Source of the DNA: Octopus sinensis
Lineage: Eukaryota
Assembly: GCF_006345805.1 (NCBI RefSeq)
Contig: NC_042998.1
Coordinates: 10,602,001-10,666,000 of the forward strand
DNA: 64,000 nt
Reading direction: 5' to 3'
Shown: positions 1-63,750 of the stretch, piece by piece
Numbering within the stretch: the first letter of the stretch is position 1
How the letters are laid out: each line of letters opens with the position of its first letter
Translations under genes and position numbers: made by a program
The notes under the pieces: generated by a model
The model's input: the letters and a program-made list of their open reading frames with translations, nothing else
Database searches by the model: none
What the model was told of the DNA's origin: nothing

Positions 1-3000
1 ACCGCCATCCACCACTATTATCCCACTACACATGCCATTAAAAAGCAATCAAATAAACAAATCACCAAAACAATTAAAACCATCCACTCTCGCCTCAACA
101 TTTCTGCTTAATGCCCAAGCATCAGCCCTTCCACCAATACACAAAAATGGAAGATAAGATTCCTGGAGGACTGGGTCGAGGCCCATCCAAACCACATCCC
201 TTTCTTCGTCCTCACTGAAACCCATCTTAGTGACCTCCACTTGGAAGCCGAGGTGAAAGTTAAAAATTTCAAAACCATTCGTGCTGATCGTGTTGGCAGA
301 AGAAAGGGTGGGACTGCCATTTATGTCCATGATTCATTCTCAACAGAAGCCATGAACATATTTTCGAATGGATACTGCGAAGCAGTTGCTGTATTCAGTC
401 AACCAACAACTTAACAGTAGTTGGGCTCTACAGACCACCCCAAACGCCCCTACCATGCTTCAAGGATGCCTCAACAGCATAAAGTGTTTCATTCAGCAGT
501 GTCAACCTGACAACATTTTAATGATGGAGATTTCAACCTTCCCGGGGTTGACTGGTCTACAAACAGTCTGCCGCCAGGTTCTTCTCTCTCAACCCCTGAC
601 AGGGAGGCAGTGGAATCGCTTCTTGACTTCATGGATGACTTCTTCTTGTCCCAACTGGTACTCGAACCAACGAGATGTCACAAAACGTCTTAGACTTAAT
701 TTTCAGCAATCACACTGATACTATCCACAATATTGCAGTGGAGAAAACCCTACTCTCCGACCATGACATGGTTCTCTGTGATCCGAGATTTCACTGGCCA
801 AAATGCAAAACAAATGTCATCCCTCCTGCTCATCCATTTGACACTATGGATTTCCACAATGCAAACTGGGAAGCGATCAATAATGATCTTGCACAAGTCG
901 ATTGGTCCTTCACGCACACTAACACACCCACTAACATCAAAAAGTCCTGGCAGTCACTTGTAGACACCATCACGAACATATGTGCAAGACACACCCCATT
1001 AAGATCTGCAAACAAATCTAAGTGTCGAATCCCTAGAAATAGAAAATCTCTCATAAGGAAAATTAAAAGAATCAACAAAAAGATCAACATGCTGAAATAC
1101 TGTCAACAGCAACACACAACCTGACTGCCATCTCGTCGCTAGAGATTAAAAAACATAAACTCCAAAACAACATGATGTCTATCATCAATAGTCAGCGAAG
1201 AGCTGAAGAGGCCTGGGCCATTGAGAAGATCAAACTCAATCCCAAAGTGTTTTTTTTCATTTGCAAAAAACACAGAGTCACTGGTTCTACTGTTGGCCCT
1301 CTGATTGATGAAAATGGTACTCTTCAAGACAATGCCAAAACCATGGGAGAAATATTGCAGAAACAATATTGCTCTTGTTTCAGCAATCCTGATATGACTG
1401 ATCTGGGCTGTATCAGTGATGTTACTCCCCAATACACTTTATCGGACATAACATTTGGCGCTCCTGATGTCTTAGCAGCAATAAAGGAAATGAAGCATAA
1501 TTCAGCAGTAGGTCCCGATAGGTCCCCTGCTTTGTCTTGAAGATGTGTCAAAACCAACTTGCACCCCCTCTAGCCAATCTGTAGCGGAACTCATTGGATG
1601 CTGGATATATACCAGAAGACCTTCTATCCCAGTCTGTTGTCCCAGTTTTCAAAAAAGGAAACAAATCGCTTGCCGTGAATTACCGTCCAATCTCACTCAC
1701 CTCTCATATCATCAAGGTATTTGAGAGGGTGCTGAGATCGCGTATGACTCACTTCCTTGAGAGTCATAATATGCTGAACCCCAACCAGCATGGATTCCGT
1801 AATGGGAGAGATTGCCTGACGCAGCTACTGCATCATTTTGATGACATTTTGAGAGCCTTGGGAGAGGGTTCCAACACTGATGTCATCTACCTTGATTTCA
1901 GCAAGGCCTTTGACAGGGTTGATCATAAGATCCTTCTGAGAAAGCTGTCCAATATTGGTGTCACTGGAAAGCTGCTGCAATGGATCAAGTGCTTCCTCTC
2001 TAACAGAACCCAACATGTTGTAGTCGAAGGAGTCAAATCCAGCCCAGCCAAAGTCAGCAGTGGTGTCCCACAAGGCACTGTGTTGGGCCCACTTCTCTTC
2101 ATCATCTACATAAATGATATTACTGACACCATCAACACAGCAACATCAGAACCTTCGCTGATGATTCCAAGCTCCAGAAGGTCATCAATGGCGTGGATGA
2201 CCGAATAAACCTTCATCAGACCTACTGGCTGTTGTCCAATGGGCGGAAAAGAATAACATGTTGCTAAATGAAGACAAATTCGAACTGATCCACTTTGGAA
2301 GGGAGGACGCTCTGAAACTCTCATACTCTCTTCCTTCTGGAGAAATTCTCATGGCATCCAACAACATCAGAGACCTGGGAGTAACAGTGGACAACAACAT
2401 AAGCTGGGCTACACATATAAGCAGCAAAGTTGACATGGCCCGCAGAATGTGTTCCTGGATTCTCAGAACCTTCCAGTCGAGAGATTCCCACGCTATTATC
2501 CTTCTCTTCTCCACTTTTGCCCGACCCCACCTTGAATACTGCTGTCCACTGTGGTCTCCCTACACAAAACAAAATATTATGAGAATTGAAGCTCCCCAAA
2601 GGTCAATCACAAAAAAGATAGATGGCATGTCAGACCTTGACTACTGGGGTAGACTAGAGAAGCTGAAATTGTATTCACTCCAACGACGCCGTGAACGCTA
2701 CATTATCTGTATGATGTGGAAAATATTCCATCAGCACTGTCCGAATGATGTTGGCATCACCTCAAAATGCATCCAAGGCTTGGACCACGTGCCATCCGTC
2801 CACAACAAAAATCTAAATCGCATCACATAACGACAATACGGCACAACTATTTCACCTCAATTGGACCCGCTCTCTTCAACATTACACCAGGACACGTCAA
2901 AAAAGAAACTGACCACACAAAATTCAAGAAGTCTTTGGACAAATTCCTTCAAACAGTACCGGACAAACCACCCACACCCGGATATGTCTCTGCAAACAAT

Positions 3001-27445: not shown

Positions 27446-27569
27446 ATTATATAGAAGGAGCTTCTACAGGACTAGAACTGTTTCATTCAAGAGAAATCTT
27501 CAGGAAATATATATATATATATATAAATATATATATAAATATATAATATATATATATATATACATACAT

Positions 27570-27602
<33 letters not shown>

Positions 27603-27661
27603 TATATATATATCTATATATATAATATATACATACATATATATATATATATAAATATATT

Positions 27662-27702
<41 letters not shown>

Positions 27703-27815
27703 GTAGTAACAGAAAAGAGGAATTTCGGTTGTCTCCACGTGGTGGATTGTAATGTATATAAGAAAAATAAAAACGGAAAATACGCACACTTACATGGTTA
27801 TAGTATAATTTTTAA

Positions 27816-27852
27816 TGTATCGACCGGTTTCGCAATCGCTATTCATGATACA
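27816..27852 (-). ncRNA. Minimal type I hammerhead ribozyme, non-canonical A3-U8 core
   Basis: tgtatc ATGAATA gc-gatt-gc GAAA CCGG TC gataca: 6-bp stem I, palindromic stem III ACCGGT, GUC site. Confidence 0.62.
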
Positions 27853-28067
27853 ATGTTTAATTTATACGAAAATATATTTTTTCTTAAGAAGAAAATGGGT
27901 CCATGTTGTTTATAATGAGATTCACGAGTGAATGATTTTACAAGTTGACCAATTGCCTCCCTTTACTTGTCAAATTGTAAAATCATTCACTCGTGAATCT
28001 CATTATAAACAACATGGACCCATTTTCTCCTTAAGAAAAAATATATTTTCATATAAATTAAACATTG

Positions 28068-28100
28068 TATCATGAATAGCGATTGCGAAACCGGTCGATA
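28068..28100 (+). ncRNA. Second copy of the A3-U8 hammerhead variant
   Basis: tatc ATGAATA gc-gatt-gc GAAA CCGG TC gata; stem I shortened to 4 bp. Confidence 0.55.
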
Positions 28101-28170
28101 ATTAAAAATTATACTATAACCATGTAAGTGTGCGTATTTTCCGTTTTTATTTTTCTCATATATATATATA

Positions 28171-28327
28171 TATAATTGTTAAAGAGGACAACAAACATTA
28201 AAGCAAGGCAAACGTCTCAATCGTATACAATATCATTTTTGGGAAAAATATTTTCCAATAATTATATTGTATACGACTTGAGATGTTTGCCTTGTCTTAA
28301 CGTTTGTTGTCCTCTTTAATAATTATA
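28171..28327. repeat. Imperfect palindrome; same family as 57484-57620
   Basis: taattgttaaagaggacaa...ttgtcctctttaataatta. Confidence 0.8.
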
Positions 28328-28745: not shown

Positions 28746-28804
28746 GTATGTATGATTGTATGTATGTATGTATGTATATATATATATATGTATATATGTG
28801 TGTG

Positions 28805-29010
28805 TGTTTGTGTGTGTGTGTTTGTCCCCCTAGCATTGCTTGACAACCGATGCTGGTGTGTTTACGTCCCCGTCACTTAGCGGTTCGGCAAAAGAGACCG
28901 ATAGAATAAGTACTGGGCTTACAAAGAATAAGTCCCGGGGTCGATTTGCTCGACTAAAGGCGGTGCTCCAGCATGGCCGCAGTCAAATGACTGAAACAAG
29001 TAAAAGAGTA
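28805..29010 (+). mobile_element. 3' half of SINE family B
   Basis: gtccccctagcattgcttgacaaccgatgctgg..gtaaaagagt. Confidence 0.88.
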
Positions 29011-31412: not shown

Positions 31413-32023
31413 GTAAATACTTTTATTTCATTTTTGCCTAAGTAAACTTTCTTCTTTTCATCAATGTCTTCTTGACAGGTAGCTTACTTAGTCTAGATAC
31501 GACTCCTAAAACTACCTGTCATCACCACTATTCGTTACTGGGAGGCCATTGAAATATTCAATCCCATTTATACATCACCACAAATGTTTGACAGTTGCTG
31601 ACCTAGAATTTCTTTAATTCCTCCATTCCTTCTCCCATCGTTTTTTCTTACCGACACTGAAAAATAAATTTAAATATAAATCCTAATTTTATTTACCAAG
31701 AATATTAAATTCACATTTTGTAATAATAAAATAATAATGAAATGTGTATGTGTCTGTGTGTCTCTTTGTTTTTTATTACTTATGTCTTACGATCGTACGA
31801 TCGATAAGAGGAGATCAGGTTGCATATTTTCAAGAACTCTCATTAAAAGTCAGTTAACAGCATGAGGATTGAGGACCACATTAACCATCGTGTTCTTTCC
31901 TAAGGCGGCAAGGTGTAATTAAAGGGAGCCTTGACTGCTATTTCTAGCATTTTGAACACCTGCGTAGATACCCGCTTATTGGATCAAACCAGTTCTGTGC
32001 TTCACTGTAAGGTGACACTTAAA

Positions 32024-32059
<36 letters not shown>

Positions 32060-32064
<5 letters not shown>

Positions 32065-34440
32065 ATAAATATTAGGGAATAAATCCAAATTACAGGGAAA
32101 AAATCAGATTTAGGATTAAATCCAATTTTATAGTAAAATATTATAAAATATTATTAGAGACAAAACCACTATTTTGCAAAACAAAAAAGGAAAGACTTAA
32201 TCAATACATAAAATTTTAATAAATAGTCAAAAAAAAACCGCCACTACAATTGTTCTTGTCTTGATCGACAATCTTCAGGTGGACTTCCAATCTAAAATAT
32301 CAATATTTTAAAATATAAAAATAATAATTTTAAAATAATTAAAGTATGAATGAAAAAATGTAAATATATAATCCATATATAACCTATATATAATCCATAT
32401 ATAATCAATATATAAACAATATATAAACTAAAATAAACCTATCAACAATTAAATATAAAATATAAAATATAAAATATAAAACAAAACAAAAAAATAATAA
32501 TAATATAATAATAAACTATATATACACCCATACACATATACCTAATTATATATAACCATATCTAACTACATACACTAAATCACACACCTATATATATATA
32601 TCCCTATACATACACATAAAAACGTCTAGGCAACTATAAATAAATAAAATAGCTAAATACTTCAACACAATACTTATTCATACTCCCACACACACACACA
32701 TACAACCCACATTCACGCTCTAGAAAACGGACATCACTTAAAATTATGAACGGAGAAATGGAATAAATGGAATTAAAAATTATATTCACTTGGTAAAACT
32801 AACACTACTTAAAAATTATGAATGAAACAATGCAATAAAACAACAGACATCGCAAATAGACACAAATTACTACGAATTCCTTAACAAACCTACCATGATA
32901 AACCAAAACTCATAAAAAACATATATGATAAAATCTCCCTTTACTAAACTCTATAACATACCTATATAGCAATCCCCCTAACCTAAACATTCACACACAA
33001 ATACACACACGTAAACCACACACCACGACATATACAAATACCCACACCACTTACACATACCTATACATACATATAAACCTCAACATATACTCCAAAAACC
33101 CACTCAACCCCACACAGACAAATAAACACAAAAATTATGAATGGATTCTTTATTAAAACTACCATGATAAGCTAAAACTCACAAAACATAAATGATAAAA
33201 CCTCCCTTACTAAACACTATAACATACTTATATAGGAATCCCTTTAACCTATACATTCACACACAAATACACACACGTAACCACACACCATAACAAATAC
33301 AAACACCCACCCCACTCACACACACCCACAAGTACATATACGCTCAACATATACACCAAACAAAATTACTTTACCAAGGAACTTAACATATGTATAAAAA
33401 GTATAACCGCTCTGGAAACGAACATCTTTTAAAATAATGAATGGAGAAATGGAATAAATGGAATTAAAAATAATATTCACGTGGCAAAACGAACACCACT
33501 CAAAAATTATGAATGAAACAATGTAATAAAACAACCAACATCGAAAATAGACAAATTACCACGAATTCCCTAAAAAAACCATGATAAACCAAAACTCTTA
33601 AAAACATATAACGATAAAATCTCCCTTTGCTAAACTCTATAACAAACCTATATAGCAATCCCCCTAACCTAAACATTCACACACAAAAAACACACACGTA
33701 AACCACAGACCCACGACTTATACACATACCTATACTAACTTATAAACCTCAATATACACCAAAAACCACTCCCCCCCCACACAGACAAATTAACACATAC
33801 ATCCCAAAACCTAAATAACAAACCCATATACACATTCACACAACAAACACACACACACGCAAAACACACACACAACAGATACATACACTCCCTCACATAT
33901 ACGCATATACATACTCACTAAACTCGATATATACAACAATATTTACACACCCACACTCATACAGATAAATAAATTATACAACTAAAAACTCACACACAAT
34001 CTCATATACATAAACACTCCAATAAAAAACAACATTAAATACATCGTAATTAACCAGAATATCAAAAATAACAATATGACATAAGGAGAAATAAAATACA
34101 TACTTACAAGTCAGTTTCAAATTATGAAGTGAAATTAAATTCTTAGCCGTTAAAAAAATCAAACCAAAATTACGTTACCATAGAAATATAACTTATGTAA
34201 AAAAAAAAAGAATACGCGCCATGGAAAGTAAACGTCATTTAAAATTATGAATGGAGAAATAGAATAAATGGAACTAAAAACTATATCCACGTGGCAAATC
34301 AACACTACTTAAAAAAAATTTATTATGAATGGATTCTTTAATAAAACTACCATAATAAATTATTATATACAATTATGAGCTTTAGCTCATCTTAGCAGCT
34401 CTAACAAACAACTTGCAGTAACCCAAATCTATTCTCGATG
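32060..34440 (-). mobile_element. Penelope pseudo-LTR-like decayed tandem region
   Basis: Strong A/C strand skew; diverged direct repeats (32720-33130, 33135-33310, 33410-33790, 34220-34360); decayed HHR at 32241-32282. Confidence 0.5.
32241..32282 (-). ncRNA. Decayed type I hammerhead (one A missing from GAAA)
   Basis: ccac CTGAAGA ttgtc-gatcaa-gacaa GAA CAATTG TA gtgg. Confidence 0.6.
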
Positions 34441-35252: not shown

Positions 35253-35680
35253 GCCATAAAAATTAACATATAATTTAGAGATGAATAAGACGTGTCTCAT
35301 CATTATATGTTATGCGTTGTGCTGGGTGGAGGTGCTAACCTCCTCTGTTCAAAAATATGACAGAGATCGTGTGTCGTATAGCCAGCTGGAGACGATGTCT
35401 CCTGGGGCTAAACAACTGTAGCATTCGGCCAAAAATGTGACTGTCACGTGTGGTTGGCAAAAAAGACATTACTTTATATATATATATATTATATATATAT
35501 ATATATATTATAAGCGGGACCAGCCATCTGAATGTGGCTAAGGACAGGGCGGGGTGGTGGGGGTGTTACTGATGCATTTAGCCCCTGGCGACTATAGACG
35601 TCACCAGGAGAGCCGACACCATCACGGTGTCCTTGCTAGCCTGTAAAGGGAGATCAGCCTCCCCGAAGATACGGATGCTA

Positions 35681-35723
35681 CACACGGACCGGTTTCGAGG
35701 TGGTCGCCTCTCGTCAGCGCATG
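35681..35723 (-). ncRNA. Canonical minimal type I hammerhead ribozyme (downstream copy)
   Basis: catgcg CTGACGA gagg-cgacca-cctc GAAA CCGG TC cgtgtg; predicted cleavage 3' of C35687. Confidence 0.9.
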
Positions 35724-36034
35724 GCAAGCACCGTTCTTCGTTGAGGACTTCCTCCACAGGCTAGAATATATAGATTTTCACTGTAAACACAGTCACTGGC
35801 GTCGAAAATCTGTTCGATAACATAAATCTCTAAGCGAGGTATAAACAGTAACTGCTCTGTAATATAAGCGGGACCAGCCATCTGAATGTGGCTAGGGACA
35901 GGGCGGGGTGGTGGGGGTGTTACTGATGCATTTAGCCCCAGGCGACTATAGACGTCACCAGGAGAGCCGACACCATCACGGTGTCCTTGCTAGCCTGTAA
36001 AGGGAGATCAGCCTCCCCGAAGATACGGATGCTA

Positions 36035-36077
36035 CACACGGACCGGTTTCGAGGTGGTCGCCTCTCGTCAGCGCATG
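36035..36077 (-). ncRNA. Canonical minimal type I hammerhead ribozyme (upstream copy)
   Basis: Identical to 35681-35723; predicted cleavage 3' of C36041. Confidence 0.9.
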
Positions 36078-36553
36078 GCAAGCACCGTTTTTCGACGCCA
36101 GGAGACAGACAAGAACACGTCCACCTTGATCCAAATACAACGGAAAGAAACACAAGGTAGGAGGAGAAAGATGGTCGATGGTCACGTGGGAGCCACGTAA
36201 GCAAGGGAGGAAGAGTGAGAGAGAGAGTGACAGAGAAATTTGAAGAGAAGAAGAAAAAATTGGAGATAGGATAAGTAAGAAAAGAAAACAGGAGGGGGAG
36301 AAGGGGAGGTAGAAGAATAAGAGAGAAAGAAACCAAAGAGTAACAGGATAGAATAATGGGAGAAGAGGAGGTAAAAGAATAAGAGAGAGAAAGAGAGAAA
36401 CACGAAAGTGTAAAAAGACAGTAGAGTGCGCATCAGAATTATTAAGATAGAACTTACGCAGAAGAGTATGCGTAGTGTTCAATATAATAATATAAATAAT
36501 AATATATATGTGTGTGTGTACATACATCCATATATATATATATATATATAATA

Positions 36554-37332: not shown

Positions 37333-38588
37333 CAGGAGTTGGACAAAGTAATGGGAACACCTAGCATCATAATTTTGAAATATCTATAAAACCGTCAAAA
37401 GTTTGTTTATTTTTATGTATTTTGATTAATTATTAGTGTTGCTCAATATGTTTTGATAAAATTGCTGTTTCTTTTCAGATATCATCAGAAAAAGGTAATT
37501 AAAATTCATGAAGATGACAGATCTATCGGACTTTCAAAGAAGTCAAATTGTTCGTGCTCGCATGGCAGGCGCTAGCGTAACGAAAACAGCCGAAATGTTT
37601 GGTGTATCAAGAAGTACTGTCTCGAAAGTGATGACAGCCTTTGAGAAAGAGGGAAAAGCCTCCTCGTCGAAACAAAACACTGGAGGAAAGCCAAAACTTT
37701 CAGACGGACCGTCGGATTCTTACGCGAATTGTTAGAAAGGATCACAAAAGAACAGATCCCAAAATTACTGCAGAGCTTAATGACCACCTCAAGAACCCAG
37801 TTTACACACCTGTTCCCCGGTTGCTGCACAAAGCTGGATTTTACAGGAGAGCTGCAATCAGAATACCACTACATTCAAAAACAAACGTTGCAAAGCGTTT
37901 AGAGTGAAGTAAAAACCTGCAGAATTGGTCCCTAGAATAGTGGAAGAATGTTATTTTCTCGGATGAGTCATCCTTTACCTTATTTCCGACCACCAACTGA
38001 GTATATGTGTGGAGACAGCCAAAAGAAGCATTTGACCCAGACTACCTTCTTCCAACTGTTAGACATGTGATGATCTGGGGGGGGGGGCGCTATATCTTGA
38101 AAATCCACCAGCCCAATGGTTTCCCTCCATGGCAGAATTAAAAGTCAAGACAATTTAAGCATTTTATCTTATCAAATTCATTCTGTGGCTGCGGAACTGT
38201 TTCCGGGGGGAAACGCAATATTTCAGGATGATAATGCACCAATTCACACAGCTAAAGTTGTTACTGAATGCCATAAGGAACATTGTAGTGAAGTCGAACA
38301 TATTATCTTGGTCAACACAGTCCCCAGATCTCAATGTTATTGAACATTTATGGTGCATTTTAGAAAAACAAGTAAGGAGTCGATATCTTCCACCATCGTC
38401 ACTACAAGAACTGGAGACTATTTTAGCTGAAGGATAGACAAAAATTCCTTTGGAAACAATTCAAACTTTGTACGAGTCCATACCGCGTAGAATTCAAGCT
38501 GTAATTACTGCCAAAGGCGGTCCTACCCCATATTAAAATATATTTGTCTGAAATTTTAAGGGGTTTCCATTATTTTGTCCAACCCCTG
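37333..38588 (+). mobile_element. Full-length decayed Tc1 (DD34E-type) transposon
   Basis: About 29-bp TIRs CAGG.GTTGGACAAA.TAATGG.AAC.CC; TA TSD; HTH LSDFQRSQIV..GVSRSTVSKV, VIFSDES, IFQDDNAPIHTAK, SPDLNVIEHLW; stops and frameshifts. Confidence 0.95.
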
Positions 38589-42656: not shown

Positions 42657-42900
42657 GCATGTATGTATGTATGTATGTATGTATGTATGTATGTATGTAT
42701 GTATGTATGTATGTATGTATGTATGTATGTATGTTTGTGCGTGTGTGTGTGTGTATGTGTGTGGCCAACAGTACTTTTAGACAACAACATTATAGAACTA
42801 ATAAATTATGGTCCTTGGCGAATTGCTGGTATCTACTCCATCAGAAAGACTAAAGCCATATCCAACTTGGATTTCAATAAAGCAAAATGGAAATTCGACA

Positions 42901-43344
42901 TAAAGTGTACTAGCCATCTGAATGTGGCTAGCCACTGGGGGTGGGTGTTACTGAAGCTTTTAGCCCCAGGAGATCATCGTCTCCAGCTGGCTTTAGATAC
43001 ACTTTCTGTGCTCTTCTGATATTCGCAAAGGGAGGTCATCCCCTACAGTTTTTCTAAATCAGTGACAGTGGTTACTGGGAAAACAAAAAATAGATATTCG
43101 CAAATAGGTCTCTTCAATCGAAAACCGGTGATTACCGTACGTTGACGAGAGGCAAAAACTTCGAAACTATAGTCCGTATGTATCACTTAGGTTTTCGAGA
43201 GAGGGATGACCTCCCTTTGCAAATATCATAAGAGCACAGAAAGTGTGCCTCAAGCCAGCTGGAGACGATGATCTCCTGGGGCTAAAAGCTTCAGTAACAC
43301 CCACCCCCAGTGGCTAGCCACATTCAGGTGGCTAGTACACTTTA
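42901..43344. mobile_element. Foldback element with 142-bp arms and an HHR in the spacer
   Basis: 42901-43042 versus 43203-43344 inverted; arms homologous to the HHR-downstream part of the 354-bp unit. Confidence 0.88.
43136..43180 (+). ncRNA. Minimal type I hammerhead, C3U variant
   Basis: cgtacg TTGACGA gagg-caaaaa-cttc GAAA CTATAG TC cgtatg; palindromic stem III ACTATAGT. Confidence 0.75.
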
Positions 43345-43384
43345 CGTTGTCGAGCGGTTACTGTTTACATCTCATTCGGAGTTT

Positions 43385-60980: not shown

Positions 60981-63289
60981 TATATATATATATACACAAA
61001 CACACACGCGCGCGTACACACACACATATGTATATATTCAACGGGCTTCATTCAGTTTCCGTCAACCAGATCCACTCAAAAGGCTTTAGTCGGCTCCAAG
61101 CTATAATAGAGGAAACTTGCTCCTAGGTGCTACCTAGTGGAACTGAACCCGGAAGCATGTGTTTGGGAAGCAAGCTTCTTACCACATAACCACGCCTGCT
61201 CCAATATATGTAGTGAGTCTGTATGTATGTTTATACATATACACCCATACATACACGCAGTCACAATTACACACATGGATACAAATAAATATATATACAG
61301 AAAGGCGTTTATTTATTTATGCAAACTTGAGGACGAGATCATATTCCCTTTTACCTTTCACTACTGCGTTTGACCCAGTTGCTGCAGAGCATCATTCTTC
61401 GCAACTTTTGCCTTCCCTAAACGAACCCCTCTTTAGTAATGCATTCCGTAAACATCCTAACAACAACATTTGTAACAACACCCCACTGCAGCACTTAAAC
61501 TCTTTACCCGTCGCTTTAATTTGGTTAGCCACTAATGTGACTATACATCGCTCTATATTTTGCTACGATATTGCTCAACTGACTTTCACAGACACAAGGG
61601 CATGTGTCTCTTTTCATTACTCTCTCAATCTTTGTCTCACAAATATTTTCCCGAAAATCATATGATTTTTGCATTCCCTCTCACCCACATTCCCAAGAAA
61701 ATACTTGAGTCAAGCTTTCCCAGGCTCGACATTACTATCCTCTCCCCTTCGGTAGTTTTAATTCAAAACATTCTGTATCTATAATGTGCATATTTGTGCG
61801 GGTTTGTGTAAAGGAATATATGCATGGGTGCGCTTACCCTTTCGTCTTTGCGTTTACGTATCTTTATGAATGTGTGTCTGTAAAGGGGGACATTTTTGTT
61901 AATGTGTAAAGCATTGCATCAATGCAAATATGTATATATGCAACTGTATTCTTTTCTTTTACAAATGAATGTACGTACGTCTATATGAGTTTAAGTGTAT
62001 ATGTGTGAATAACCGCTTTTGCAACCATTGGCAAAATAATTCGGTCATTCTAAATTAAGATTATTCTATAATTGCCTTTAGACTTAAATAGCTTTTTGGG
62101 GTGCAGTGCTTTATATCTTCCACTCCTTTTGTTTGCTGTTTCCCTTCTCCCTCTTCAACGTGATTTCTTCCTTTATCTTTTGTTGTTTGCGGCATTTGTT
62201 TCTTTCAATTTTTCTCCTCCTTTTCTTTGCCTCATTCCCACCAGTTCACGTCGCACTTCCATCTTATGAGCACTCACACAACCTCTCATCCGGCCGTCGC
62301 AAACCTATTTCAAATTTTCCATAATTCATTTGATCACAACCTAAGCGACCATACACCTTTCTCTCTATTCATAACTCTCAGGCAAAAGCAAAGCAACTGA
62401 TACGTTAAATCTCACACTCCTCACGGCAATTAAACTTATTGAAGTCTTCTATTAAACTCGCCTAAGTAATGCATTGACTTGATAAAATTTTATTTCTTTT
62501 CGCTTCATATATGTAATATATTGCAAATGTTTGCACTGACGGCTATTTAGCTACCAGGTGTAAACGTACTGACGAAGCACAAGTAACATCACCACCAAAA
62601 CAGATTCAGCCCCTCTCCACCTCAAATGCAAACTCTACACACGTAAGCCGCGTAATTTAGCCCACGGTTAAAAATAGAAAGCGTACAAGGATGTTTAAAT
62701 ATAAATAGAACAATCTAAATAAAAGCTCAGACAAATAATACGATAAGGACAATATGGAGAAGAATACATTTCTGTAATGCATGCATATTTTCGAGGAGAC
62801 TCTAACAACACTAAAATGAACAGCTTGTGCATATATCTGGGAAACTAGTCCTGATCTAAAATTAGTTTTGTCCAAACAGACTACATAATTTAAGAAGATA
62901 AACCTTCAAAAGGAAAGATGTAGTCATAAGCATAGAATTACGTTATTTAAAAGGAAGAATACTTAAAAAATACAAGCAACGAAGAAAGAATATTTTTGAA
63001 GAAGTGTGGGTCCCCTTTGAAGACTATTCTGATAAGTATATCAAATCCCAAGCAAAAACAAAAAGAAAAAGTACAAAAAGCAAACATAGAGATTGTTGAA
63101 AAAAGTAACAGAAAAGAACTATTAATCATAACTTAAATCAATAACGAAAAGACTTCAATGAAAAAGAAAATAAAAGGACAGACAAATGCTACAGAAATAA
63201 AGCATTAGAAAATATAAAGAATAAAGAAACTTCTGTATTATGATCTCTTTTAAGCAAAATACCTTCTCGTGAAAAATCGAGAAAATATT

Positions 63290-63446
63290 AGGAGTGGCTG
63301 TGTGGTAAGTAGCTTGCTTACCAACCACATGGTTCCGGGTTCAGTCCCACTGCGTGGCATCTTGGGCAAGTGTCTTCTACTATAGCCTCGGGCCGACCAA
63401 TGCCTTGTGAGTGGATTTGGTAGACGGAAACTGAAAGAAGCCTGTC

Positions 63447-63510
<64 letters not shown>

Positions 63511-63750
63511 GTATTTGTGTGTATGTTTGTGTGTCTGTGTTTGTCCCCCTAGCATTGCTTGACAACCTATGCAGGTGTGTTTACGTCCCCGTAACTTAGC
63601 GGTTCGGCAAAAGAGACCGATAGAATAAGTACTGGGCTTACAAAGAATAAGTCCCGGGGTCGATTTGCTCGACTAAAGGCGGTGCTCCAGCATGGCCGCA
63701 GTCAAAATGACTGAAACAAGTAAAAGAGTAAAAAGAGTAAAAGAGTAACA
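63290..63750 (+). mobile_element. SINE family B
   Basis: Head, central (TA)n, 3' half, (AAAGAGT)n tail. Confidence 0.92.

What the first reader, a model, noticed from the sequence alone, without database searches (positions are those of the whole stretch)
27761..28156. Hammerhead with a compensatory A3-U8 core swap, twice, in a foldback palindrome
Seen: the 7-nt core reads AUGAAUA instead of CUGANGA. It is bracketed exactly by a 6-bp stem I (UGUAUC/GAUACA), a 2-bp stem II, GAAA, palindromic ACCGGU and a GUC site. Established: C3 and G8 form a tertiary Watson-Crick pair in the active fold, and minimal PLE HHRs with palindromic stem III act as dimers. Inference: both invariant positions changed together to another Watson-Crick pair, which argues for selected function, and standard CUGANGA searches would miss this family. 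The opposed copies mean either strand's transcript contains one HHR, although the long hairpin would sequester it after full transcription.
Basis: partly seen in the sequence, partly recalled or inferred. Interest (0 to 1): 0.82.

Follow-up and report, generated by a model that had tools for sequence, protein, structure and literature searches.

The report
Variant-core hammerhead motif in retroelement foldback
A 414-bp hairpin-forming repeat in an octopus-like genome carries, in each arm, a minimal hammerhead-ribozyme-like motif whose two normally invariant paired core bases (C3, G8) are replaced by A and U; it most likely descends from a Penelope-type retroelement ribozyme, but it is one locus, its activity is untested, and a similar swap (U3-A8) is already known in nature.

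Summary
The motif is there, with two caveats. The full version (6-bp stem I, AUGAAUA core, 2-bp stem II, GAAA, ACCGGU, GUC) exists only on the minus strand of the left arm. The right-arm copy has lost one base and keeps a 4-bp stem I. The two copies are also arms of one young palindrome (27752-28165), so they count as one observation.

Pure chance is unlikely: 0 hits in 300 shuffles and in 60 Mb of simulated sequence. The same window holds three further Penelope-type minimal hammerheads. Two have a canonical core and the identical GAAACCGGUC. One sits in the same layout as the candidate: a head-to-head inverted pair with 3' ends pointing outward.

My best reading is an inverted pair of 5'-truncated retroelement 3' ends inserted in a (TA)n microsatellite, each carrying that element's hammerhead.

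Not shown:
- that a family exists (no second copy found anywhere I could search);
- that A3-U8 is its consensus;
- that the variant cleaves.

Published pairwise mutagenesis rescued only G3-C8. Natural U3-A8 covariation was reported in 2011 and 2014.

A read-through transcript of this locus folds into a -289 kcal/mol hairpin that buries the motif. Interest is modest: at best a new variant of a known kind.

The parts
27752..28165 (.). Foldback palindrome. Two ~200-nt arms (27752-27949 and 27969-28165) surround a short central spacer.
   Evidence: Inverted repeats I1 and I7. Self-blast gives 93.5% over 415 nt. Arm alignment A1. As RNA it folds into one hairpin of -289.2 kcal/mol, z = -38.
27816..27852 (-). 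Complete hammerhead-like motif in the left arm. Stem I 5' strand UGUAUC 27852..27847; core AUGAAUA 27846..27840; stem II GC-GAUU-GC 27839..27832; GAA 27831..27829; ACCGGU 27828..27823; C17 at 27822; stem I 3' strand GAUACA 27821..27816.
   Evidence: The hammerhead secondary structure costs -4.8 kcal/mol against a monomer MFE of -5.8. The double-hammerhead dimer costs -19.7 against a dimer MFE of -22.2.
28066..28102 (+). Second copy of the motif in the right arm. The core block 28072-28096 is identical. Stem I is reduced to 4 bp (UAUC/GAUA, 28068-28071 with 28097-28100) by a 1-nt deletion.
27505..27702 (.). (TA)n-rich microsatellite on the left of the element.
   Evidence: A (TA)n target preference for PLE insertions is reported in PMC8557442.
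27703..27751 (.). Unique 49-nt stretch between the left (TA)n and the left end of the palindrome. It may be a PLE-type one-sided 'tail' or simply flanking DNA; this is unresolved.
   Evidence: Sequence. No match elsewhere in the window. The 30-40-bp one-sided tail of PLE insertions is described in PMC8557442 and PMC11167929. The link is inference only.
28158..28176 (.). (TA)n run on the right of the element. It separates the element from a second, unrelated foldback.

Best explanation
The locus is a dead insertion product of a Penelope-like (or retrozyme-type non-autonomous) retroelement. Two roughly 200-bp, 5'-truncated copies of the element's 3' end are joined head-to-head, with their 3' ends pointing outward, inside a (TA)n microsatellite. 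Each copy carries the element's type-I minimal hammerhead about 65 nt from its 3' end.

The motif belongs to the PLE minimal-hammerhead lineage, with the C3-G8 tertiary pair replaced by A3-U8. In a master element transcribed as a tandem or multimer, two motifs would pair through ACCGGU to build a 6-bp helix III. Stem I would also form in trans, and cleavage would follow GUC.

At this locus a read-through transcript of either strand folds into a near-perfect 200-bp hairpin that buries the motif. The locus itself is therefore most likely non-catalytic, and at most a source of hairpin-derived small RNAs.

Shown: the anatomy, the improbability of chance, and the presence of the same kind of elements and the same layout nearby.
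Inferred: descent from a PLE, the dimer mechanism, and tolerance of A3-U8.
For: 1. The architecture is complete on the minus-strand copy. It includes G10.1-C11.1, A15.1-U16.1, C17 and a palindromic helix III.
2. Chance is unlikely: 0 of 300 shuffles and 0 in 60 Mb of simulated sequence.
3. All four exact GAAACCGGTC strings in the window lie in hammerhead contexts. Two of them are canonical CUGACGA motifs at 36077..36035 and 35723..35681, in a partial tandem that ends in (TA)n.
4. A third member of that family, at 43136-43180, sits between 145-nt inverted arms (42898-43042 and 43203-43347). That is the same head-to-head, 3'-ends-outward layout.
5. PMC8557442 describes PLE insertions as heavily 5'-truncated and often carrying an adjacent inverted 5'-truncated copy. 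It places the hammerhead near the 3' end and reports a (TA)n target bias and a one-sided tail. PMC11167929 shows a PLE protein cleaving and extending both DNA strands at AT-rich sites.
6. PMC4209133 reports paired minimal hammerheads 100-700 bp apart on opposite strands, and a natural 3-8 covariation (U3-A8).
7. The double-hammerhead dimer fold lies within 2.5 kcal/mol of the dimer MFE. That is closer than for the canonical neighbour, at -25.9 against -34.0.
8. Two-bp stem II occurs in natural hammerheads (PMC3088659).
Against: - No PLE reading frame (reverse transcriptase plus GIY-YIG) lies next to the element, and the arms show no coding signal.
- The arms share no sequence with the canonical hammerhead family beyond the core.
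- No second copy was found anywhere, so neither a family nor a consensus is shown.
- Metazoan PLE minimal hammerheads usually have a 4-8-bp helix II, often with a bulged base after A9 (PMC4209133). This one has 2 bp.
- GCGAUUGC is self-complementary and competes with the hammerhead fold in dimers.
- A3-U8 cannot be reached from C3-G8 through a wobble intermediate.
- In a type III hammerhead only G3-C8 rescued activity (PMC9901934).
- The nearly equal arm lengths and tiny central loop also fit a foldback DNA transposon.
- One arm already carries a stem I-breaking deletion.
Confidence: 0.5

Rival explanations
1. Decayed copy. The motif descends from an ordinary CUGANGA PLE hammerhead. The A3 and U8 changes are two unselected substitutions that happen to be complementary, fixed in one dead copy before it was duplicated into the palindrome.
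For: - Hammerhead-lineage copies are dense here, with three other loci in 64 kb. A large genome therefore holds many decaying copies, and a few will show any given double change.
- The neighbouring family already shows a core change, U3 at 43136-43180.
- Stem II is unusually short, which could reflect decay.
- One arm has a stem I deletion.
- A3-U8 showed low activity in pairwise mutagenesis (PMC9901934).
Against: - Both changes are transversions, and they hit exactly the two partners. The other 11 conserved positions, G10.1-C11.1 and a fully Watson-Crick 6-bp stem I are all intact. My estimate for that outcome by random decay is about 6e-5 per copy (inference).
- Stems and loops resemble no canonical family seen in the window.
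Confidence: 0.2
2. Foldback MITE or DNA-transposon relic with a chance hammerhead look-alike. The palindrome is a non-autonomous DNA element inserted at TA, and the motif is coincidental.
For: - The palindrome is near-perfect, with equal arms and a tiny loop.
- It lies in a TA-rich target.
- An unrelated MITE-like foldback sits 10 bp away at 28170-28325, with a second copy at 57481-57620.
- There is no adjacent PLE reading frame.
- Chance hits of this descriptor are expected a few times per genome of this size (estimate).
Against: - About 1e-4 expected per window; 0 of 300 shuffles and 0 in 60 Mb.
- The motif also carries features not needed to be noticed: G10.1-C11.1, C17, and the same CCGG palindrome as the genuine hammerheads 8 kb away.
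- No clean target-site duplication: TATATA|AGAAAAAT...ATTTTTCT|CATATA.
- No second copy in the window.
- The layout matches the hammerhead element at 43 kb.
Confidence: 0.15
3. Hairpin-RNA or small-RNA locus. The relevant function is the long double-stranded hairpin, processed into siRNA- or miRNA-like RNAs. The hammerhead-like string is irrelevant.
For: - Hairpin of -289 kcal/mol, z = -38.
- The only Rfam similarities are to long-hairpin miRNA precursor models such as MIR2646 and MIR4208.
Against: - Those hits fall far below gathering scores (111.8 against 245 bits) and reflect generic long hairpins.
- Any inverted transposon pair gives such a fold.
- No conservation or expression data are available.
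- This reading does not explain the hammerhead-specific features, and it is compatible with the best explanation as a downstream consequence.
Confidence: 0.1

Closest known systems
Minimal type-I hammerheads of Penelope-like elements (Cervera & de la Pena 2014, PMC4209133; Lunse, Weinberg & Breaker 2017, cited but not readable here)
   Same: - Type-I topology.
- Helix III reduced to A15.1-U16.1 around a palindrome, so two copies must pair.
- No loop-loop tertiary contacts.
- G10.1-C11.1 present.
- Found in invertebrate repeats, sometimes as two motifs on opposite strands 100-700 bp apart.
   Different: - The core is AUGAAUA, not CUGANGA.
- Helix II has 2 bp rather than the usual 4-8 bp, and lacks a bulged base after A9.
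- No PLE reading frame or pseudo-LTR is demonstrated at this locus.
- No family of copies is demonstrated.
Natural U3-A8 hammerhead covariants (Perreault et al. 2011, PMC3088659; Schistosoma mansoni Cercyon PLE variant with ~1,300 hits, PMC4209133)
   Same: Both core partners are changed together to another Watson-Crick pair, and one of the examples comes from a PLE.
   Different: - The orientation is purine at 3 and pyrimidine at 8 (A-U), not U-A.
- U3-A8 is reachable from C3-G8 through U3.G8 wobble transitions. A3-U8 needs two transversions through a mismatch.
- The string 'A3-U8' did not occur in any hammerhead paper of the searchable library.
Engineered C3/G8 exchanges (Przybilski & Hammann 2007, RNA 13:1625, known to me from its title and citations only; Roberts et al. 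2023, PMC9901934)
   Same: They test the same question: whether the 3-8 pair can be swapped.
   Different: In the 2023 comprehensive double-mutant map, only C3G+G8C showed strong rescue. [quoted passage not shown] The 2007 title states that tolerance depends on surrounding elements. Neither study tested a PLE-type dimeric minimal motif.
PLE insertion architecture (Craig et al. 2021, PMC8557442; Frangieh et al. 2024, PMC11167929)
   Same: - 5'-truncated copies.
- An inverted 5'-truncated copy adjacent, forming inverted repeats.
- Hammerhead near the 3' end.
- Insertion into (TA)n or AT-rich DNA.
- Possible one-sided tail.
   Different: Here both inverted copies are truncated at almost the same point, giving a near-perfect palindrome. 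No reading frame or longer copy is attached.
Metazoan non-LTR retrozymes (Cervera & de la Pena 2020, PMC7229834; Li et al. 2026 preprint, 10.64898/2026.07.22.740005)
   Same: Short, AT-rich, non-coding repeats of about 170-400 nt that carry type-I hammerheads and are proposed to derive from PLE pseudo-LTRs.
   Different: Retrozymes are direct tandem repeats that yield circular RNAs. This locus is an inverted pair, not a tandem.

Membership tests
Hammerhead ribozyme (catalytic core) | Conserved core C3 U4 G5 A6 N7 G8 A9 ... G12 A13 A14 | tested here: not met
   The core reads A3 U4 G5 A6 A7 U8 A9 ... G12 A13 A14. Positions 3 and 8 deviate and the others match.
Hammerhead ribozyme (catalytic core) | Positions 3 and 8 able to form a Watson-Crick pair | tested here: met
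   A3 and U8 are complementary. Whether this pair supports catalysis is not shown. PMC9901934 found strong rescue only for G3-C8, and nature is known to use U3-A8 (PMC3088659, PMC4209133).
Hammerhead ribozyme (catalytic core) | Three helices around the core, A15.1-U16.1, G10.1-C11.1, and an H17 cleavage site that is not G | tested here: met
   Minus-strand copy: stem I 6 bp, stem II 2 bp with G10.1-C11.1, A15.1/U16.1, C17. Plus-strand copy: stem I only 4 bp.
Hammerhead ribozyme (catalytic core) | Site-specific self-cleavage | not testable with these tools
   This needs in vitro transcription and cleavage assays.
Hammerhead ribozyme (Rfam models) | Match to an Rfam hammerhead covariance model | tested here: inconclusive
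   No hammerhead hit even at E <= 10. The perfect-core minimal hammerheads at 35.7 and 36.0 kb also get none, so the test cannot detect this subclass.
PLE-associated minimal hammerhead | Type-I motif with helix III reduced to a palindrome, enabling dimers | tested here: met
   ACCGGU, identical to the canonical copies in the window. The double-hammerhead dimer costs -19.7 against an MFE of -22.2 kcal/mol.
PLE-associated minimal hammerhead | Longer helix II (4-8 bp), often with an unpaired base between A9 and 10.1 (PMC4209133) | tested here: not met
   Helix II has 2 bp (GC/GC) with a GAUU loop and no bulge.
PLE-associated minimal hammerhead | Located in the pseudo-LTR of an element encoding reverse transcriptase plus GIY-YIG endonuclease | tested here: not met
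   No such reading frame is adjacent. The reverse-transcriptase fragments at 1.6 and 13.4 kb are distant and not shown to be PLE-type. Solo or truncated copies without a reading frame are the majority in published genomes (PMC4209133), so this weakens membership without excluding it.
PLE-associated minimal hammerhead | Many genomic copies forming consensus families with covarying stems | not testable with these tools
   No eukaryotic genome collection can be searched by DNA here. The window has one locus. About 105 kb of cephalopod and other fetched loci had none. External scans gave zero.
PLE insertion architecture | 5'-truncated copies in tandem or inverted arrangement, hammerhead near the 3' end, (TA)n or AT-rich target | tested here: met
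   The arms meet at their 5' sides. The motifs face outward, about 65 nt from the outer ends, with (TA)n on both sides. The hammerhead element at 42.9-43.35 kb has the same layout. The criteria come from PMC8557442.
Foldback MITE | Fixed terminal inverted repeats flanked by a target-site duplication, with multiple unit-length copies | tested here: inconclusive
   The ends are AGAAAAAT...ATTTTTCT with flanks TATATA and CATATA, so there is no clean duplication. No other copy in the window. Genome-wide copy number could not be tested.
miRNA or hairpin-RNA precursor | Match to a curated precursor family, or evidence of processing | tested here: not met
   MIR2646 scores 111.8 bits against a gathering score of 245. 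The other hits are also far below threshold.

The most novel reading that the evidence does not exclude
Octopus genomes harbour an active or recently active retroelement family whose minimal dimeric hammerhead uses an A3-U8 tertiary pair. That would be a naturally selected purine-3/pyrimidine-8 A-U version of the core pair, so far unreported in the literature I could search. It would show that all orientations of the 3-8 pair are used in nature and that CUGANGA-based descriptors undercount hammerheads.
Probability: 0.25. Interest if true: 0.45.

Novelty: new variant of a known kind. Interest (0 to 1): 0.3.

Why it matters
If A3-U8 proves to be the consensus of a multi-copy family and cleaves as a dimer, it would add a second natural covariant of the hammerhead's only tertiary Watson-Crick pair. 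It would be the first with a purine at position 3. It would also give a natural test of how much base identity, as opposed to pairing, matters at G8, whose 2'-OH is the proposed general acid. In practice it would justify relaxing the 3/8 positions in hammerhead descriptors for retroelement-rich animal genomes.

If it is a private mutation in a dead copy, it has no significance beyond annotating a PLE-type inverted insertion.

Either way, the window shows that Rfam models miss PLE-type minimal hammerheads entirely, including those with a perfect core.

Tried and rejected
- **Rfam, gathering and E <= 10.** No hammerhead hit. I do not count this as evidence against the motif, because the canonical minimal hammerheads in the window also score nothing.
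- **miRNA reading.** Rejected. The hits are generic long-hairpin matches far below threshold.
- **Other copies in the window.** Blastn with word size 7 and a pattern search allowing 3 mismatches found none.
- **Collection scans.** Exact or degenerate pattern scans of metagenome contigs (twice), viral contigs and prokaryote genome contigs all gave zero. These collections probably hold no octopus DNA, so the negatives say little.
- **Protein routes to other copies.**
  - Exact look-ups of the arm reading frames and ten other window frames found nothing.
  - A homologue search with the 58-aa arm frame found no candidate.
- **Sampling related genomes through repeat proteins.**
  - A reverse-transcriptase fragment led to Argonauta hians at 63% identity.
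  - A SINE reading frame led to Octopus vulgaris at 95% identity.
  - Two loci came from an unidentified ENA eukaryote.
  - In about 105 kb there was no copy of the foldback and no A3-U8 motif. The sample is far too small to be informative.
- **Coding signal in the arms.** None; no GIY-YIG remnant in Pfam.
- **The 49-nt 'tail' candidate.** No match elsewhere in the window; unresolved.
- **Thermodynamics.** The hammerhead fold is competitive for the monomer and dimer. Nearest-neighbour energies cannot decide catalysis.
- **Another A3-U8 descriptor hit, 32646-32686 (minus strand).** Rejected as chance: non-palindromic helix III, inside a strongly skewed low-complexity region.
- **Papers not held in the library.** Lunse et al. 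2017 and Przybilski & Hammann 2007. I cannot rule out that one of them already lists A3-U8.

Full report
**What is in the sequence**

The window is eukaryotic and repeat-rich. It holds (TA)n, (CA)n and a 3.3-kb (TGTA)n microsatellite, SINE copies, reverse-transcriptase, Helitron-type helicase and Tc1-like fragments, and no tRNA or Rfam family at gathering score.

A SINE reading frame that recurs in the window is 95% identical to a hypothetical protein of Octopus vulgaris. A reverse-transcriptase fragment is 63% identical to one from Argonauta hians. The source is therefore an octopod, probably Octopus.

The finding lies in a palindrome spanning 27752-28165. Its arms are 27752-27949 and 27969-28165. 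Aligned to each other, the arms differ over the ~183 nt outside the centre by two substitutions and one single-base deletion (alignment A1). The inverted duplication is therefore young, or has been homogenised.

(TA)n lies on both sides. On the left, a unique 49-nt stretch (27703-27751) sits between the microsatellite and the palindrome.

**Check of the observation**

On the minus strand, 27852..27816 reads UGUAUC AUGAAUA GC-GAUU-GC GAA ACCGGU C GAUACA. This is a type-I hammerhead layout:
- a 6-bp, fully Watson-Crick stem I;
- a 7-nt core;
- a 2-bp stem II that starts with G10.1-C11.1;
- G12 A13 A14;
- A15.1 and U16.1 enclosing CCGG;
- C17, followed by the return strand of stem I.

The plus-strand copy (28066-28102) has the same 25-nt core block. 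It lacks the C of GAUACA, which leaves a 4-bp stem I.

The description is accurate for one copy and overstated for the other. 'Twice' is one event seen in both arms.

**Is it more than chance?**

I wrote a descriptor for this architecture: stem I of at least 4 or 6 bp, a core with a chosen 3-8 pair, stem II of at least 2 bp, GAA, an A...U palindrome, and H17. In the real window it finds the two arms and two canonical motifs. It found nothing in 300 dinucleotide-preserving shuffles. It also found nothing in 60 Mb of Markov sequence modelled on the window.

By hand I estimate about 1e-4 chance hits per 64-kb window, and a few per 2.7-Gb genome.

Several details were not needed to notice the motif, yet they are typical of real hammerheads and argue further against chance: G10.1-C11.1, C17 giving a GUC site, and the palindrome ACCGGU.

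**Context that changes the picture**

The same scan found two perfect-core minimal hammerheads on the minus strand, at 36077..36035 and 35723..35681. They read CAUGCG CUGACGA GAGG-CGACCA-CCUC GAA ACCGGU C CGUGUG, and they lie 354 nt apart in a partial direct tandem that ends in (TA)n. All four exact GAAACCGGTC strings in the window belong to these two motifs and to the two arms.

A relaxed scan found a third member of that family at 43136-43180 (plus strand):
- The surrounding sequence is 69% identical over ~280 nt.
- The core is UUGACGA, a U3.G8 wobble.
- Stem I pairs are kept through base changes.
- Helix III has changed from ACCGGU to ACUAUAGU, so it remains palindromic.

This hammerhead sits between 145-nt inverted arms (42898-43042 and 43203-43347, 95% complementary). 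That is an inverted, more severely 5'-truncated copy placed head-to-head with a sense copy, with the 3' ends outward. The candidate palindrome has the same orientation logic. Its motifs face outward, about 110 nt from the centre and about 65 nt from the outer ends.

**Comparison with the literature**

- **Cervera and de la Pena 2014 (PMC4209133).** They defined minimal hammerheads in the flanking repeats of Penelope-like elements (PLEs). Helix III is reduced to a palindrome, so the motif must act as a dimer. In vitro activity is low, and copies are scattered by the thousands in invertebrate genomes. They also noted pairs of such motifs 100-700 bp apart on opposite strands, and a core covariation, U3-A8, with about 1,300 hits in Schistosoma mansoni.
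- **Perreault et al. 2011 (PMC3088659).** They had already reported natural U3-A8 covariation, and stem II of only two base pairs in many hammerheads.
- **Craig et al. 2021 (PMC8557442).** They describe PLE insertions as strongly 5'-truncated and arranged in partial tandems. [quoted passage not shown] The hammerhead lies near the 3' end, a 30-40-bp tail occurs at one end, and insertion is biased toward microsatellites including (TA)n.
- **Frangieh et al. 2024 (PMC11167929).** They show a PLE protein cleaving and extending both strands of AT-rich DNA. This offers a route to head-to-head copies.

The candidate locus fits this description point by point, and so do the two neighbouring hammerhead loci. 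It does not fit in three respects. Stem II is shorter than the 4-8 bp usual for metazoan PLE motifs. No PLE reading frame is nearby. The arms share no sequence with the canonical family apart from the core.

**Most likely mechanism**

I read the locus as an inverted pair of 5'-truncated 3' ends of a PLE or PLE-derived non-autonomous element. Each end carries that element's hammerhead.

In a tandem or multimeric transcript of a master element, two motifs would pair through ACCGGU to form a 6-bp helix III. Each stem I would form in trans. Cleavage would follow C17.

The nearest-neighbour energy of that double-hammerhead fold is -19.7 kcal/mol. The best dimer fold is -22.2, and two separate monomers give -11.6. 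For the canonical neighbour the hammerhead dimer is 8 kcal/mol worse than its best dimer. On secondary-structure grounds the variant is therefore no worse a hammerhead than the canonical copy. One competitor is the self-complementary stem II string GCGAUUGC.

At this locus, a transcript of either strand that crosses the whole palindrome folds into a hairpin of -289 kcal/mol (z = -38). The antisense arm is made first, so the motif is captured as soon as it emerges. The locus itself is therefore very unlikely to act as a ribozyme.

**What is not shown**

Whether A3-U8 is selected, tolerated or merely accidental cannot be decided from one locus.

For selection: both changes are transversions at exactly the two partners, with every other conserved position and the stems intact. 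I estimate that outcome at roughly 6e-5 per decaying copy.

Against:
- Hammerhead-lineage copies look dense in this window, so a large genome offers many trials.
- A3-U8 cannot evolve from C3-G8 through a wobble intermediate.
- Comprehensive double-mutant mapping of a type III hammerhead found strong rescue only for G3-C8, with all other mutants of that region low (PMC9901934).

The paper that tested all exchanges in several contexts (Przybilski and Hammann 2007) and the main survey of PLE variants (Lunse et al. 2017) were not available to me. The string 'A3-U8' did not occur in any hammerhead paper of the searchable library.

**Attempts to find relatives**

- No copy in the window.
- No hit in two metagenome scans, one viral scan and one prokaryote-genome scan.
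- No protein-level trace of the arm reading frames.
- None in 42 kb of Octopus vulgaris, 21 kb of Argonauta hians, or 42 kb of an unidentified eukaryote reached through repeat proteins.

These collections are poorly suited to an octopus repeat, so the negatives are weak.

**Verdict**

My estimates:
- About 0.8 that the motif belongs to the PLE-type hammerhead lineage.
- 0.5 for the full best explanation, including the PLE-type inverted insertion.
- About 0.25 that A3-U8 marks a selected, cleavage-competent family.
- About 0.15 for a MITE with a chance look-alike.
- About 0.2 for a privately mutated dead copy.

Covariation of the 3-8 pair in natural, PLE-borne hammerheads is already published. 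At most this is a new variant of a known kind, and the interest is modest until a genome-wide copy count and a cleavage assay are done.

Noticed in passing
window 35681-35723 and 36035-36077, minus strand (repeat unit about 35506-36094): Two identical canonical-core PLE-type minimal hammerheads: CAUGCG CUGACGA GAGG-CGACCA-CCUC GAAACCGGUC CGUGUG. They lie 354 nt apart in a partial direct tandem (235-nt repeat, 98% identical) that ends in (TA)n. No Rfam hammerhead model detects them, even at E <= 10.
   Followed up: yes
window 42898-43347 (hammerhead at 43136-43180, plus strand): A diverged member of the same family (69% identity) with a UUGACGA core (U3.G8 wobble). Helix III has changed to the palindrome ACUAUAGU, and stem I pairs are kept through base changes. 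It lies between 145-nt inverted arms that are 95% complementary, a head-to-head inverted 5'-truncated pair.
   Followed up: yes
window 28170-28325 and 57481-57620: A second, unrelated 156-nt foldback lies directly after the (TA)n run to the right of the finding. It has a 76%-identical copy 29 kb away, is MITE-like, and may have a TTAA or TA target site. It scores 58 bits against Rfam mir-2513, below the gathering score of 89.
   Followed up: partly
many sites, e.g. window 28800-28950, 16690-17087, 54974-55388, 60568-60984, 63290-63746: Numerous copies of a SINE with an internal microsatellite. One of its reading frames is 95% identical to an Octopus vulgaris 'hypothetical predicted protein', and copies match O. 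vulgaris loci at 84-94%. This points to an octopus as the source of the window, and shows a SINE annotated as protein in that genome.
   Followed up: partly
window 50593-53858: A 3.3-kb (TGTA)n microsatellite with about 819 copies. It produces spurious reading frames of up to 1,152 aa and a strong GC/AT skew.
   Followed up: partly
window 1594-2208, 13381-14094, 19237-19857 (minus strand), 37508-38343: Fragments of other mobile elements: two reverse-transcriptase pieces (RVT_1), a Pif1 2B-domain helicase piece (Helitron-like), and Tc1-like transposase remnants with a helix-turn-helix domain. I did not check whether either reverse transcriptase is PLE-type.
   Followed up: partly
window 32000-34000: A region of 28% GC with extreme strand asymmetry (GC skew -0.59, AT skew +0.34) and no tandem repeat scoring 200 or more. 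It also holds a chance A3-U8 descriptor hit at 32646-32686 with a non-palindromic helix III.
   Followed up: no
L001 15077-15118, minus strand (Argonauta hians, GCA_054771915.1): A canonical-core minimal hammerhead-like motif: UCUCUAC CUGAGGA ... GAAACGCGU U GUAGAGA. It has a 7-bp stem I but a weak 2-bp A-U stem II. It may be a real PLE-type motif in another octopod.
   Followed up: no
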